From the sequence record MN988561.1: 64,000 nt of DNA; one strand, given 5' to 3'. This document shows, piece after piece, positions 288 to 3,170 of the stretch (positions within the stretch are counted from its first letter, which is position 1; each line of letters opens with the position of its first letter). A model generated the notes under the pieces. That model had not been told where the DNA came from. It did not search any database and saw only the letters and a list, made by a program, of their open reading frames with translations. The position numbers and the translations under genes are program-made.

Positions 288-422
288 GACTTGATGTTGC
301 GAAAGAAATGGTTACTTCGTATTCCAAACGAGAAATGTAGGTATCGAATCCTGCTATCCTAATAGGATATCGTCTAAGATAGGACGCTAAAATTTCCATT
401 TCTGACACTATCTCATCAAGTC
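288..422 (+). ncRNA. Y RNA/YrlA-like unit 1 with permuted tRNA module
   Basis: Outer stem GACTTGATG/CATCAAGTC, TTGCGA...ATCT loop, inner stem AGAAATGG/CCATTTCT; cargo is T-arm GTAGG-TATCGAAT-CCTGC, then TATCCTA/TAGGATA acceptor, then D-arm GTCTAAGATAGGAC. Confidence 0.8.
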
Positions 423-430
423 TCATATTC

Positions 431-513
431 AGATCTTGACGTTGCGACTAGTATCGGATACTTCGCTTTGGTTGCTAAAAACTCCGATGCAATATACTAT
501 CTCGTCAAGATCT
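431..513 (+). ncRNA. Y RNA-like unit 2, minimal (no tRNA module)
   Basis: AGATCTTGACG/CGTCAAGATCT outer stem, TTGCGA...ATCT loop, GTATCGGA/TCCGATGC inner stem, TACTTCG motif, short apical loop. Confidence 0.75.
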
Positions 514-523
514 TTCAGTTTAT

Positions 524-668
524 CCTAACGTTGCGAATTAAACAGTTACTTCGATATCAAGCAGAAGGTCAATGGTTCGAATCCATTCATGCGACACGCG
601 TTGCATGTAGCTCAGTTGGTTAGAGCGTCCGCCACCACAAGATCTGTTTAAGTCATTATCTCGTTAGG
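524..668 (+). ncRNA. Y RNA/YrlA-like unit 3 with permuted tRNA module
   Basis: CCTAACG/CGTTAGG and TTAAACAG/CTGTTTAA stems; AATGG-TTCGAAT-CCATT T-arm precedes CATGCGA/TTGCATG acceptor and GCTC-AGTTGGTTA-GAGC D-arm. Confidence 0.85.
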
Positions 669-677
669 TCCTTATAA

Positions 678-822
678 CCTAGTGTTGCGATCGGTACAAC
701 TTCATCGCATTGTAAGCCCTGTGTCATTGGTTCAAATCCAATTCCTCCGTCCATCTATCGGAGGATAGCTCAGTCTGGTAGAGCAAGGAAAGTATGTTGT
801 ATCAATATACCATCTCACTAGG
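678..822 (+). ncRNA. Y RNA/YrlA-like unit 4 with permuted tRNA (Thr-UGU-like)
   Basis: CCTAGTG/CACTAGG and GGTACAAC/GTTGTATC stems; ATTGG-TTCAAAT-CCAAT T-arm; TCCTCCG-TCCA-TCTAT-CGGAGGA acceptor; GCTC-AGTCTGGTA-GAGC D-arm. Confidence 0.85.
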
Positions 823-828
823 ATCCTT

Positions 829-960
829 ATCTCATCCACCAACCTCGGTGTAAGAGTGGAAAGAGTTACGTGATCGTATGAGAATACGATCACAGTCATT
901 TAGGTCATGTACCATGTGTACAAGGATCATTCGAAGGTGCTCGTCATCTTCAGCAAATAA
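829..960 (+). other. Structured spacer that does not follow the array scaffold
   Basis: GTGATCGTAT-GAGA-ATACGATCAC perfect 10-bp GNRA hairpin, plus TCCAC/GTGGA and TGTAC/GTACA stems; no GTTGCGA. Confidence 0.4.
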
Positions 961-1104
961 TGTAGAGTTGCGAATATATCAAGTTCATCGCTTACCATAT
1001 ACCAAGCGGGTAGCTCAGTGGTTAGAGCACTAGGATGTAACAGTCGTAGAGGTCGTCGGTTCGAATCCGACTCTAACTTCTTGATATAGACTTATCTCTC
1101 TACA
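961..1104 (+). ncRNA. Y RNA-like unit 5, tRNA module opened within the acceptor stem
   Basis: TGTAGAG/CTCTACA and TATATCAAG/CTTGATATA stems; CGCTT-ACCA-linker-AAGCGGG, then D-arm, distorted anticodon arm and GTCGG-TTCGAAT-CCGAC T-arm. Confidence 0.8.
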
Positions 1105-1113
1105 ACTTTTATA

Positions 1114-1248
1114 TGTACTGTTGCGACTAATACGGTTACTTCGTTGCAAATGAAACATAGGTTCGAATCCTATCCAGAGGATTGTCGTAAGATGACATCT
1201 GGCTGAGCATTGGTGAGCTCATCTCCGTATTAACTACATCTCAGTACA
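1114..1248 (+). ncRNA. Y RNA/YrlA-like unit 6 with permuted tRNA (Cys-GCA-like)
   Basis: TGTACTG/CAGTACA and TAATACGG/CCGTATTA stems; TTGCAAA loop; ATAGG-TTCGAAT-CCTAT T-arm; CCAGA/TCTGG acceptor; GAGC-ATTGGTGA-GCTC D-arm. Confidence 0.85.
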
Positions 1249-1258
1249 ATTACAATTC

Positions 1259-1415
1259 GTACCGTTGCGAATGATATGAATACATCGCTGTAGAACCGAC
1301 GTCGTAAGACATGCTAGTTCAAGTCTAGCTCTCCGTCCCAATACTATGACGGAGATGGTGAAATTGGTAGACACATCGGTAGATAAATCTTCATATCGGC
1401 TTACAATCTCGGTAT
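1259..1415 (+). ncRNA. Y RNA/YrlA-like unit 7 with permuted class II tRNA (Leu/Tyr-like)
   Basis: GTACCG/CGGTAT and GATATGAA/TTCATATC stems; variable arm CGTCGTAAGACAT; GCTAG-TTCAAGT-CTAGC T-arm; TCTCCGT-CCCA...ACGGAGA acceptor; GTGAAATTGGTAGACAC D-arm. Confidence 0.85.
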
Positions 1416-1424
1416 ATCTTAGAC

Positions 1425-1449
1425 GCTATGTTGCGATAGTCCTCATAGC
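1425..1449 (+). promoter_or_regulatory. Minimal TTGCGA hairpin in the Ro60 leader (candidate autoregulatory site)
   Basis: GCTATG-TTGCGA-TAGTCCT-CATAGC lies about 8 nt before the AGGGA SD-like sequence and 20 nt before the ATG at 1470. Confidence 0.5.
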
Positions 1450-1469
1450 ATTATCATAGGGAAAATGTC

Positions 1470-3038
1470 ATGGCTTCGATCAATAATAAGTCAGTTGCTA
1501 ATCTTGCACGTACGGTTGCTCCTAAGGCAGTTGTAGCACCTCGTACATTCACTGGTTTATCTCATAACATTCGTAACAATAATGGTGCGATGGCGTATGA
1601 TATCACTCCTATCGAGCAATTGAGACGTACTGTTCTCTCTTGCATGCTCTGGGAGGATTCTGCATATGAGTCTGGTGAACAGATTGCTAATCGTATTGAA
1701 AGATTGATCGGAGAGTGTGATCCCTCTGATGTAGCACATCTTGCTCGTGAAGCAAGACATATCATGAAGCTACGTCATGTTCCTCTCTTTATGTGCATCA
1801 CGATGCTGAAGTATCCCGAACATAAGAAATATGTTCGTAAGACACTCGCATCAGTTATTGAGCGTCCTGATGAGCTTGGTCAAGCTCTCGCTCTCTACTG
1901 GAAGGATGCTCTTTCTCCTGCTCGTACTACTGAAGATACTGAAATCGGACCTCGAGTTACTTACGTTTCTCAGAGAAAGTCTGATCTGAATCTTCCTCTC
2001 CAACTACGTAGAGGTCTTGAAGATGCTCTACAGAAGTTTGACTCTTATCAGTTGAAGAAGTACCTTATGAAGGACAAGCCTGTCTCTATGGCTGACATTC
2101 TTCGTATCGTCCACCCTAAGGGTAAGACTGATGAGATCAAAGCTACCTATGGCGAAATCGTCAAGGGTACTGCTACTGCACCTGATACATGGGAGTCTCG
2201 TCTCTCATCTTCTGGTAGATCTGAGAAAGCTACAATCTTCACAGATATGCTCGAACGTAACAAATTAGGTGCAATGGCTCTACTGAAGAATCTGCGTGGT
2301 ATGACTGAGGCTGGTGTTGATACCAATCTTATTAATACTGCGATTCAGAAGATGAATACTGAACGTGTTCTTCCTTTCAGATTCCTCACAGCTGCTCGTC
2401 ATGCTCCTCAGTTCAAGTCTAGTCTCGGTGAGGCTATGCTAAAATCTCTGAAGGACATTCAGAATCTGCCTGGTCATACAGTACTACTGATTGACATCTC
2501 AGGTAGTATGGGTGGACGTATTTCAGGTAAGTCTGATCTGAGACGTATTGATGCTGCAGCTGCTATTGCTATCATGTTGAAGGAAATTTGTCAGTCTTCT
2601 GATATGTTTGTCTTCAATTATGGTACGTATCAAGTACGTAACGATAACGTCTTCTGCGTGAATCAACCTACTGCTAACAATCACGGATACTCCAGGATTG
2701 TTGAGAGTACGAGGATCTACAATTACGAAGAAGATGCTGTAGTGAAGAGAGGATTTGATCTATCAGATCTTATCGTCAATTCAGTAGTTGGTGGAACTGA
2801 TCTCCAGCAAGCTGTCAGTTACATCAATAATACTGTAGAGTATGATCGTATGATTATCTTTACAGATGACGAATCATCTACTGTTCCGCCAGCTCCTAGA
2901 GGTCTTTCCTATTCGATCAATGTATCGACTGGAAACTATGGAGTGACGTACGGTGATTATGTCCACATCAACGGATTCTCTGAAGGTGTGATCGGCTATG
3001 TCACTGAGTACGACAAGTACGTGAAGAGTCAGAATTAA
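1470..3038 (+). CDS. rsr: TROVE-domain RNA-binding protein (Ro60/Rsr ortholog) with C-terminal vWA domain
   Basis: EQLRRTVLSCMLWED, TWESRLS, LGAMALLKNLRGM, VLPFRF TROVE motifs; MIDAS DISGS...GGTD...FTDDE. Confidence 0.93.
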   Translation: MASINNKSVANLARTVAPKAVVAPRTFTGLSHNIRNNNGAMAYDITPIEQLRRTVLSCMLWEDSAYESGEQIANRIERLIGECDPSDVAHLAREARHIMKLRHVPLFMCITMLKYPEHKKYVRKTLASVIERPDELGQALALYWKDALSPARTTEDTEIGPRVTYVSQRKSDLNLPLQLRRGLEDALQKFDSYQLKKYLMKDKPVSMADILRIVHPKGKTDEIKATYGEIVKGTATAPDTWESRLSSSGRSEKATIFTDMLERNKLGAMALLKNLRGMTEAGVDTNLINTAIQKMNTERVLPFRFLTAARHAPQFKSSLGEAMLKSLKDIQNLPGHTVLLIDISGSMGGRISGKSDLRRIDAAAAIAIMLKEICQSSDMFVFNYGTYQVRNDNVFCVNQPTANNHGYSRIVESTRIYNYEEDAVVKRGFDLSDLIVNSVVGGTDLQQAVSYINNTVEYDRMIIFTDDESSTVPPAPRGLSYSINVSTGNYGVTYGDYVHINGFSEGVIGYVTEYDKYVKSQN

Positions 3039-3045
3039 GTAGTGA

Positions 3046-3073
3046 GAATTGGGAGTGAAATACCTCCCAATTC
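3046..3073 (+). terminator. Hairpin after the TROVE gene (terminator or processing site)
   Basis: GAATTGGGAG/CTCCCAATTC 10-bp stem followed by CATTTAT. Confidence 0.55.
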
Positions 3074-3086
3074 CATTTATCTAAAT

Positions 3087-3170
3087 GCCCACTTGATGGA
3101 ATTGGTAGACATAAGGCACTTAAAATGCCTAGCTTAATGCGTACCGGTTCGAGTCCGGTAGTGGGTACCA
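3087..3170 (+). tRNA. trnL: tRNA-Leu(UAA), CCA encoded
   Basis: GCCCACT/AGTGGGT acceptor, AGGCA-CT TAA AA-TGCCT anticodon arm, long variable arm, ACCGG-TTCGAGT-CCGGT T-arm, ACCA. Confidence 0.95.

What the first reader, a model, noticed from the sequence alone, without database searches (positions are those of the whole stretch)
1425..1470. Eighth, minimal TTGCGA hairpin in the Ro60 translation-initiation region
Seen: GCTATG-TTGCGA-TAGTCCT-CATAGC repeats the outer stem and invariant TTGCGA of the array, but has no inner stem or cargo. It ends about 8 nt before the SD-like AGGGA. Inference: spare Ro60 binds its own leader and represses translation, matching protein level to Y RNA supply (autogenous control by RNA mimicry).
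Basis: partly seen in the sequence, partly recalled or inferred. Interest (0 to 1): 0.7.

Follow-up and report, generated by a model that had tools for sequence, protein, structure and literature searches.

The report
Minimal Y-RNA hairpin before phage Ro60
A 25-base hairpin just upstream of a Rhizobium phage's Ro60 gene is a stripped-down copy of the seven Y-RNA genes before it, so Ro60 might bind its own message, but nothing yet shows that it regulates anything.

Summary
GCTATG-TTGCGA-TAGTCCT-CATAGC lies at 1425-1449. It ends 8 nt before AGGGA (1458-1462) and 20 nt before the ATG (1470) of a 522-aa TROVE/Ro60 gene. The window is Rhizobium phage RHph_TM40.

The hairpin has the frame of the seven upstream Y-RNA-like units: an outer stem closed by G:C, UUGCGA on the 5' side and a CUC-ending box on the 3' side. 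It has no inner stem and no cargo. Chance probability is about 8e-6.

In about 230 other TROVE loci, a Y-like module often ends within 30-50 nt of the start codon. Those modules are complete (59 nt or more). No other leader holds a comparable minimal hairpin.

Homologues at 44-50% protein identity lack the 5' motif in their leaders. Near-identical phages keep the hairpin, but they are too close to be informative. Folding gives no robust switch. An RNA-library contig from a ~90% relative keeps the leader length.

Autogenous repression is plausible in geometry and precedent, but untested (about 0.3). The rivals are a deletion relic, an mRNA 5'-end protector and a free mini Y RNA.

The parts
288..422 (+). 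Y-RNA-like unit 1: 9-bp outer stem, UUGCGA, inner stem, tRNA-like cargo, AUCUC
431..513 (+). Y-RNA-like unit 2: short type of 83 nt with no tRNA-like cargo and an 11-bp outer stem
524..668 (+). Y-RNA-like unit 3: T-arm then D-arm order, with a sub-threshold Rfam YrlA match
678..822 (+). Y-RNA-like unit 4, with a sub-threshold Rfam YrlA match
961..1104 (+). Y-RNA-like unit 5: cargo 1009-1073 matches the Rfam tRNA model in normal D-to-T order
1114..1248 (+). Y-RNA-like unit 6
1259..1415 (+). Y-RNA-like unit 7, the last full unit, separated from the hairpin by an AU-rich spacer of about 9 nt like the other inter-unit spacers
1425..1449 (+). The finding: a minimal eighth module. 5' arm 1425-1430, UUGCGA 1431-1436, UAG 1437-1439, UCCU 1440-1443, 3' arm 1444-1449.
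1458..1462 (+). Shine-Dalgarno-like AGGGA, 8 nt after the hairpin and 7 nt before the ATG
1469..1474 (+). CAUGGC, which includes the start codon. It is an alternative partner of the 5' arm GCUAUG in a competing 50-nt fold.
1470..3038 (+). TROVE/Ro60 gene, 522 aa: TROVE domain plus vWA-like C-terminus
3046..3073 (+). 10-bp hairpin after the stop codon with a weak T tail, followed by tRNA-Leu(taa) at 3087-3170. Possible 3' end protector of the Ro60 message.

Best explanation
The hairpin is the eighth member of the phage's Y-RNA array, the one nearest the ribosome-binding site. It is reduced to the Ro60-recognition frame: an outer stem closed by G:C, the UUGCGA 5' strand and a CUC-ending 3' strand. 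The inner stem and cargo are gone. It occupies the position that a complete short Y RNA holds in many other TROVE loci. The most likely working model is that it stays in the leader of the Ro60 message and acts as a binding site for Ro60 that is not occupied by Y RNA. A 60-kDa ring bound at -45 to -21, 8 nt from the Shine-Dalgarno sequence, would hinder 30S loading. Ro60 synthesis would then fall when protein exceeds Y RNA. Shown: the anatomy, the position, the derivation from the array design and the identity of the gene. Inferred: that Ro60 binds a module lacking the upper stem, that the hairpin remains on the translated RNA, and the direction of the effect.
For: All eight copies share the G-UUGCGA ... 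CUC frame with flanking arms, and the chance probability is about 8e-6. In the seven full units the motif lies in an asymmetric internal loop between the outer and inner stems. This matches the description of phage and bacterial Y RNAs, in which a 'large internal bulge' harbours the CGAA motif (PMC12135203). It also resembles the GNCGAA and GGUCCGA 5'-strand motifs (PMC4201824). The nearest solved relative of this protein is Thermus phage phiRo60 (E 1.7e-12). That protein binds a simplified stem-bulge-stem Y mimic with a Kd of about 17 nM (PMC12135203). Ro60 mainly contacts the 5' strand (PMC4201824). The hairpin's two departures from the array's 3' box (AU to UC) would let GCGA pair with UC-C. 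This may partly replace the missing inner stem (read from the sequence; an inference). The junction between the Y array and the TROVE gene looks like a control point elsewhere. A Y module ends within 30 nt of the start in 23 of 79 viral loci, against about 1 in shuffles. About 8-11 of 80 viral loci have an intrinsic-terminator-like hairpin at that junction. An RNA-library contig from a ~90% relative runs without gaps from the end of unit 7 through the leader into the gene. The geometry resembles classical operators upstream of the Shine-Dalgarno sequence, such as thrS and T4 gene 43 (from my own knowledge).
Against: There is no binding or expression data. The hairpin is found only in Cuauhnahuacvirus genomes that are too similar to test conservation. 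There are 0 differences in the 52-nt leader, but also only 1.4% in the gene and 1.5% or less in four of the units. Every subfamily homologue (44-50% identity) whose leader could be read lacks a 5' motif there. A relaxed search found mini hairpins in 6 of 85 leaders, against 6.8 in shuffles. The upper stem of the stem-bulge-stem frame is missing. The motif reads CGAU rather than CGAA, and in phiRo60 the fourth-base change weakens binding about 3-fold (PMC12135203). In context the hairpin has a predicted pair probability of only 1-26%. The spacers on both sides are AU-rich and 8-9 nt long, like the inter-unit spacers. The hairpin could therefore be cut away from the message like any other unit.
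Confidence: 0.3

Rival explanations
1. The hairpin is a relic. A short Y RNA such as unit 2 once sat next to the ribosome-binding site, as in many other loci. One internal deletion removed its inner stem and loop. What remains has no function and has not yet decayed.
For: Complete short modules of 59-96 nt hold this position in other phages, and the 25-nt version is unique. Relatives show other partial remains at the same place. L005 has a solo 3' box, TTTACTC-CATAG, whose arm matches the window's CATAGC but has no 5' motif. L008, L259 and L260 have only a pyrimidine box before the Shine-Dalgarno sequence. A fresh deletion would leave stem and motif intact by default. The genomes that carry the hairpin differ by only about 1% in conserved segments. 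The array also tolerates a 138-nt stretch of unknown role at 823-960.
Against: The stem is perfect and the 7-nt 5' motif is intact. The two 3'-box changes happen to improve local pairing. A ~90% relative keeps the leader length without gaps. Phage genomes tend to lose useless DNA.
Confidence: 0.33
2. The hairpin protects the mRNA end or marks a processing boundary. The Ro60 message is cut out of a long tRNA/Y-RNA precursor. The hairpin, perhaps capped by Ro60, would shield the new 5' end from 5'-end-dependent RNases. The 10-bp hairpin at 3046-3073 would shield the 3' end. The net effect would be stabilisation, which is positive rather than negative feedback.
For: The gene lies at the end of a ~10-kb same-strand tRNA region, between a Y array and tRNA-Leu(taa). 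No convincing promoter or terminator lies between unit 7 and the gene. Hairpins flank the ORF on both sides, and the 3' one lacks a proper T tract. The RNA contig is co-linear from unit 7 into the gene. Y RNAs upstream of rsr are processed from one precursor in M. smegmatis (PMC4201824).
Against: A stabiliser does not need a Ro60 motif. The stem is only 6 bp and -6.2 kcal/mol. No 5' ends are mapped. The RNA contig is not proof of a single transcript, nor of RNA origin.
Confidence: 0.17
3. The hairpin is a free mini Y RNA. It would be excised like the other units and act in trans, occupying Ro60's Y-RNA site without bringing a tRNA-like or effector-tethering module. It would serve as a gate or competitor.
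For: Its spacing from unit 7 (about 9 nt, AU-rich) and from the Shine-Dalgarno sequence (8 nt, AU-rich) equals the inter-unit spacers of 7-10 nt. It has the same frame as the other units. Unit 2 shows that cargo-less units exist in this array.
Against: At 25 nt it is far below any described Y RNA (80-130 nt, PMC4201824) and below the smallest module found here (59 nt). It has no upper stem. Nothing shows that it accumulates.
Confidence: 0.1
4. The hairpin is half of a conformational switch. Without Ro60, GCUAUG pairs with CAUGGC (the start codon) and UCCU pairs with GGGA (the Shine-Dalgarno sequence), which closes the ribosome-binding site. Ro60 would lock the Y-like hairpin and open the site, so the effect would be activation.
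For: In the 1419-1480 context the closed fold has 91% probability and the start codon is 98% paired. The two alternative 3' arms differ by one base.
Against: The fold is no better than shuffled sequence, with z of +0.3 to +1.2. In longer contexts it drops to 2-4%. Co-transcriptional folding favours the local hairpin anyway. Positive autoregulation gives no obvious benefit.
Confidence: 0.05

Closest known systems
Bacterial and phage Y RNAs (YrlA, YrlB, Yrl1 and Yrl2; Rfam RF02553; Chen et al. 2014, PMC4201824; phiLo phiRo60, PMC12135203)
   Same: It is encoded right next to a TROVE/Ro60 gene. A terminal stem encloses a conserved CGA-containing 5'-strand motif. It belongs to a same-strand array with units that carry T-arm and D-arm mimics. 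Short cargo-less members (YrlB type, unit 2) are known.
   Different: It is 25 nt long, against 59-157 nt here and 80-130 nt in the literature. It has no inner stem, so it is not a stem-bulge-stem. It has no loop or tRNA-like module. Its 3' box is UCCUC rather than AUCUC. It lies inside the translation-initiation region.
Autogenous translational operators that mimic the protein's main RNA ligand (E. coli thrS, ribosomal-protein operons, T4 gene 43, gene 32 and regA, MS2 coat protein); comparison from my own knowledge
   Same: A small copy of the protein's natural RNA target is placed just upstream of its own Shine-Dalgarno sequence. The position, -45 to -21, overlaps the 5' part of the 30S footprint.
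   Different: No binding or repression has been shown. It is not conserved beyond one phage genus. Autoregulation has not been reported for Ro60 in the papers I searched.
5'-terminal stabiliser hairpins of processed mRNAs (ompA type); comparison from my own knowledge
   Same: It is a hairpin at the likely 5' boundary of a message cut from a polycistronic precursor.
   Different: The 5' end is not mapped. The stem is short. It carries a protein-binding motif that a plain stabiliser does not need.

Membership tests
Y RNA (YrlA/YrlB type) | Encoded adjacent to a Ro60/TROVE gene | tested here: met
   The hairpin ends 20 nt upstream of the TROVE ORF.
Y RNA (YrlA/YrlB type) | Terminal stem enclosing the conserved 5'-strand Ro60 motif (GNCGAA-like; UUGCGA in this lineage) | tested here: met
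   It has a 6-bp stem closed by G:C and an exact UUGCGA, as in units 1-7. The motif reads CGAU, as in unit 4, not CGAA.
Y RNA (YrlA/YrlB type) | Stem-bulge-stem: a second (inner) stem above the motif | tested here: not met
   Only 7 nt lie between UUGCGA and the 3' arm. At best 2-3 pairs around a triloop could form.
Y RNA (YrlA/YrlB type) | tRNA-like domain (YrlA) or effector-binding loop | tested here: not met
   There is no cargo. Units 1 and 3-7 have T-like or D-like arms.
Y RNA (YrlA/YrlB type) | Match to the Rfam YrlA covariance model at gathering score | tested here: not met
   There is no match at 1425-1449. Units 3 and 4 reach 36-37 bits against a gathering score of 69.
Y RNA (YrlA/YrlB type) | Bound and stabilised by Ro60 | not testable with these tools
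   This needs EMSA or immunoprecipitation.
Autogenous translational operator by RNA mimicry | Operator resembles the protein's main RNA ligand | tested here: met
   It shares its frame with the seven neighbouring Y units.
Autogenous translational operator by RNA mimicry | Lies in the translation-initiation region of the protein's own mRNA | tested here: inconclusive
   The position, -45 to -21 and 8 nt from the Shine-Dalgarno sequence, fits. Whether the mature message keeps it is unknown. A co-linear RNA-library contig is only a hint.
Autogenous translational operator by RNA mimicry | Protein binding lowers translation of its own message | not testable with these tools
   This needs reporter fusions and toeprinting.
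Autogenous translational operator by RNA mimicry | Operator conserved with the gene in related genomes | tested here: inconclusive
   It is invariant in 96-100% relatives, which is uninformative. It is absent at 44-50% identity and in about 230 further loci.
Intrinsic terminator or attenuator | GC-rich stem followed by a T tract | tested here: not met
   The scan did not call it. The stem has 2 G:C pairs and the tail reads ATTATCAT.

The most novel reading that the evidence does not exclude
Ro60 controls its own synthesis by binding a Y-RNA mimic in its leader. The same logic may apply widely. In roughly a third of phage TROVE loci a complete short Y module ends within 30 nt of the start codon. 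Ro60 bound to the unprocessed last module would then gate ribosome entry and tie protein output to Y-RNA occupancy.
Probability: 0.2. Interest if true: 0.7.

Novelty: new variant of a known kind. Interest (0 to 1): 0.4.

Why it matters
Ro60 and its Y RNAs are conserved from bacteria and phages to humans, where Ro60 is a major autoantigen. How cells or phages match the amount of protein to the amount of Y RNA is not known. A Y-like hairpin in the Ro60 leader would give a simple, directly testable feedback device. It would also give a natural 25-nt minimal binding site for structural work. If it proves to be a relic, it still documents how Y-RNA arrays grow by duplication and decay by internal deletion next to the gene they serve.

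Tried and rejected
- **Rfam.** A scan at E<=1 found nothing for the hairpin except a chance minus-strand snoRNA match at E 0.82.
- **Promoter and terminator scan.** Matches were at chance level. There was one weak -10/-35 match at 1380-1407, and the hairpin was not called a terminator.
- **Regulon idea.** The 103 kb of the phage genome that I scanned holds no further G-TTGCGA...CTC hairpins next to genes.
- **Closer relatives.** A single-protein scan of IMG/VR found none. Profile scans of IMG/VR, JGI metagenomes and GTDB genomes returned only relatives at 41-42% identity or less. The contig of the closest homologue, P0002 at 50%, had no DNA available.
- **Apparent minis.** The 40-nt 'mini modules' in L139, L152 and L246 turned out to be internal parts of full YrlA units.
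- **Leaders elsewhere.** A relaxed search for motif-bearing mini hairpins in 85 leaders gave 6 hits against 6.8 in shuffles.
- **Thermodynamic switch.** The fold depends on context and is no better than shuffled sequence.
- **Conservation in Y65, TM30 and TM39.** Uninformative.
- **RNA data.** The first query listed no run. The second found one root metatranscriptome. Its contigs show a ~90% relative, but the positions of most mismatches in the leader were not printed.
- **Fetching that contig.** A search with an 87-aa protein fragment found nothing.
- **Start-codon predictions.** My automatic predictions were wrong in some loci, for example L033 and L036. The gap statistics are therefore approximate.

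Full report
**Source and context**

The window matches Rhizobium phage RHph_TM40 (MN988522.1, Cuauhnahuacvirus, Kleczkowskaviridae) at 100% identity. The region lies at the end of a ~10-kb same-strand tRNA cluster. Between tRNA-Leu(tag) (197-281) and a gene annotated 'TROVE domain-containing protein' (1470-3038), the record annotates nothing.

The protein has a TROVE domain (E 2.8e-13) and weak vWA matches. Its nearest solved relative is the Ro60 of Thermus phage phiLo (9KOP/9L5Y, E 1.7e-12). It has thousands of TROVE homologues.

**The observation**

The sequence is as described.

| Feature | Coordinates |
|---|---|
| 5' arm GCTATG | 1425-1430 |
| TTGCGA | 1431-1436 |
| TAGTCCT | 1437-1443 |
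| 3' arm CATAGC | 1444-1449 |
| AGGGA (Shine-Dalgarno-like) | 1458-1462 |
| ATG of the Ro60 ORF | 1470 |

Eight TTGCGA copies lie on the + strand in 297-1436. The other 62.8 kb of the + strand holds 11.

Every one of the eight copies has the same frame:
- It is preceded by a G that closes an inverted repeat of 6-11 bp.
- On the 3' side, the arm is preceded by a box ending in CUC. That box is AUCUC in units 1-7 and UCCUC in the hairpin.

Folding the seven full units shows a common plan:
- an outer stem;
- an asymmetric internal loop, with UUGCGA plus 1-4 nt on the 5' side and 5-10 nt plus AUCU on the 3' side;
- an inner stem of 8-9 bp;
- a cargo with T-arm-like and D-arm-like hairpins.

Unit 2 (83 nt) has no such cargo. 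Units 3 and 4 give sub-threshold Rfam YrlA matches, and the cargo of unit 5 matches the tRNA model.

The hairpin is this frame with the internal loop closed on itself. For a random leader, the chance of holding G-TTGCGA with perfect 6-bp arms is about 8e-6. In 103 kb of the phage, the strict pattern (allowing CTG/TGT variants of the motif) returns the seven units, this hairpin, two looser + strand matches elsewhere, and one hit inside a coding region.

**Relation to known Y RNAs**

- Chen et al. found YrlA-like RNAs next to Ro60 in more than 250 bacteria and phages. They describe a 5'-strand motif, GNCGAAN0-1G, that resembles the vertebrate GGUCCGA. They note that Ro60 mainly contacts the 5' strand (PMC4201824).
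- The phiLo study describes phage Y-like RNAs as a terminal stem flanking a large bulge with a CGAA motif. It shows that a simplified stem-bulge-stem mimic binds with a Kd of about 17 nM, and that single CGAA changes weaken binding 3- to 4-fold (PMC12135203).
- G-UUGCGA fits this picture. The hairpin keeps the lower stem and the motif but lacks the upper stem. It reads CGAU, as unit 4 does.
- Its two differences from the array's 3' box (AU to UC) would allow G:C and A:U pairs with GCGA around a bulged C. That could partly replace the lost inner stem. This is my inference from the sequence.

**Conservation in relatives**

Four close relatives (TM30, TM39, Y65 and the identical TM2_3B group) keep 1418-1500 unchanged. 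Divergence between Y65 and TM40 is patchy.

| Segment | Differences |
|---|---|
| Leader (52 nt) | 0 |
| Ro60 gene | 1.4% |
| Units 1, 2, 4, 6 | 1.5% or less |
| Units 3, 5, 7 and tRNA-Leu(taa) | 5-14% |

Invariance of the hairpin therefore carries no weight.

The next homologues form a subfamily of 511-529 aa at 44-50% identity. Their leaders could be read in L005, L006, L007, L008, L009, L259 and L260.

None has a 5' motif in the leader:
- L005 has three full units. It then has a solo 3' box followed by CATAG, which matches the first five bases of the window's 3' arm CATAGC. This suggests a common ancestral last module that decayed differently in each lineage.
- L006 has five units, then a terminator-like hairpin and an unrelated 11-bp hairpin.
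- L009 has a full module whose 3' arm abuts the Shine-Dalgarno sequence.
- All but L006 have a pyrimidine box (ATCTC, TACTC, AACTC, GACTCC or ATCCT) 5-12 nt before the Shine-Dalgarno sequence.

**The wider pattern**

I collected three sets of loci: 80 viral, 80 metagenomic and 80 bacterial. I added eight GenBank phages. I then searched upstream of each TROVE start for modules with a 5' motif, a 3' box and paired arms.

| Set | Distinct loci | Module in last 300 nt | Ends within 30 nt of start | Ends within 50 nt | Shuffle expectation (within 30 nt) |
|---|---|---|---|---|---|
| Viral | 79 | 46 | 23 | 34 | about 1 |
| Metagenomic | 73 | 55 | 14 | 34 | about 1.4 |
| Bacterial | 77 | 58 | 5 | 26 | about 1.9 |

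Most modules that end within 30 nt in the viral set are short, 59-96 nt. So a Ro60-binding module directly before the ribosome-binding site is the common layout.

The window's 25-nt version is the smallest by far, and it is unique:
- Candidate 40-nt minis were parts of full units.
- A relaxed search for motif-bearing mini hairpins in leaders found no enrichment.
- About 8-11 of 80 viral loci place an intrinsic-terminator-like hairpin between the last module and the gene. This suggests that the junction is used to set the ratio of Y RNA to Ro60.
- Some automatic start predictions were wrong, so these counts are approximate.

**Folding**

Alone, the hairpin folds at -6.2 kcal/mol, and 11 of 200 shuffles fold as well. 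In longer contexts its pairs have 1-26% probability.

In the 1419-1480 context, a competing 50-nt fold has 91% probability. It pairs GCUAUG with CAUGGC (the start codon) and UCCU with GGGA (the Shine-Dalgarno sequence). This fold is no better than shuffled sequence, and it fades in longer contexts. Thermodynamics therefore neither supports nor excludes a switch. If the switch were real, it would predict activation by Ro60, not repression.

**Expression data**

No run was listed for the whole array. A query with 1400-2400 found one root metatranscriptome.

Its contigs include a 355-nt piece from a ~90% relative. That piece covers 1402-1732 with 33 mismatches and no gaps. It continues about 21 nt further 5' into a diverged unit 7. 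This shows that the leader length is kept in a relative about 10% diverged, and that the end of unit 7, the hairpin and the gene are co-linear in an RNA library.

This is not proof of a single transcript. The positions of most mismatches were not printed. I could not retrieve the contig by another route.

**Mechanism**

What is shown is the anatomy and the position.

I rank autogenous repression first among the functional models, at about 0.3:
- It needs only that Ro60 binds the lower stem plus the motif.
- The site lies 8 nt from the Shine-Dalgarno sequence and inside the 5' part of the 30S footprint. The footprint and the thrS and T4 gene 43 precedents are from my own knowledge.
- The junction is a plausible control point.

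A plain relic is about equally likely, at 0.33. Internal deletion of a short unit explains every feature without selection, and other lineages show partial remains at the same place.

The remaining alternatives are:
- an mRNA 5'-end protector (0.17);
- a free mini Y RNA (0.1);
- an activating switch (0.05).

The AU-rich spacers of 8-9 nt on both sides equal the inter-unit spacers. The hairpin may therefore be cut out like any other unit, which would limit any cis effect to the precursor.

**Verdict**

The hairpin is real and not due to chance. It is a minimal member of a Y-RNA array, placed at the Ro60 ribosome-binding site. This is a new variant of a known kind. The regulatory claim is attractive and easy to test, but it has no comparative or experimental support so far.

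Noticed in passing
window 288-1417: The GenBank record does not annotate the seven-unit Y-RNA-like array. Neighbouring units have related outer stems (units 1/2, 3/4, 5/6/7), which suggests growth by tandem duplication. The cargo order differs between units: T-arm then D-arm in units 3, 4 and 7, but normal tRNA order in unit 5 (Rfam tRNA 33.9 bits at 1009-1073, not called by ARAGORN).
   Followed up: partly
window 823-960: A 138-nt gap lies between units 4 and 5 and has no TTGCGA. It holds a solo ATCTC box at 829-833, a perfect 10-bp hairpin (GTGATCGTAT/ATACGATCAC, 870-893) and a small GTAC hairpin near 908-922. Its role is unknown.
   Followed up: no
window 524-668, 961-1104, 1259-1417, 3087-3170 versus L004 (phage Y65): Divergence between TM40 and Y65 is concentrated in the cargo of units 3, 5 and 7 and in tRNA-Leu(taa), at 5-14%. 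The other units, the leader and the Ro60 gene differ by 1.5% or less. This looks like cassette-like exchange or fast evolution of the tRNA-like parts.
   Followed up: partly
window 3046-3073: A 10-bp hairpin sits 8 nt after the Ro60 stop codon with only a weak T tail. It is followed by tRNA-Leu(taa). It may protect the 3' end of the message rather than terminate transcription.
   Followed up: no
L008:164: The N-terminal alignment (IASANQ against MASINN) suggests that this TROVE homologue starts at ATT, 27 nt upstream of the called GTG. This would be either a non-canonical start or a sequencing error.
   Followed up: no
L006:1150-1190, L030, L048, L050, L065/L067, L073 (within ~120 nt upstream of the TROVE start): Intrinsic-terminator-like hairpins lie between the last Y module and the TROVE start in about a tenth of viral loci. 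This is a different way to limit Ro60 relative to Y RNA.
   Followed up: partly
L005, L007, L008, L009, L259, L260 leaders; window 1439-1443: A pyrimidine box (ATCTC, TACTC, AACTC, GACTCC, ATCCT, TCCTC) lies 5-12 nt (14 nt in the window) before the Shine-Dalgarno sequence in seven of eight subfamily leaders. In some it is complementary to the Shine-Dalgarno sequence, for example UCUCU/GGAGA in L007. It may be a leftover 3' box of a last module or an anti-Shine-Dalgarno element.
   Followed up: partly
L062, about -47 to -20 from the TROVE start: A truncated Y-like hairpin, TTGCG-GTGGATATATTTCAT-CGCAA, carries the 5' motif and a TTCATC box but no 3' box. It is followed by TTTTATTT. It is the only other partial module seen at this junction, and it looks like a terminator.
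   Followed up: no
L005:1447-1577: There is an Rfam skipping-rope RNA (RF02924) match at 37.2 bits, just above the gathering score of 36.7, in the metagenomic phage contig that carries a 47%-identical TROVE gene.
   Followed up: no
L013 (Caulobacter phage CcrColossus) 730-1935: At least nine Y-like modules lie in tandem upstream of the TROVE gene. Long Y arrays are therefore not unique to the Rhizobium phage.
   Followed up: partly
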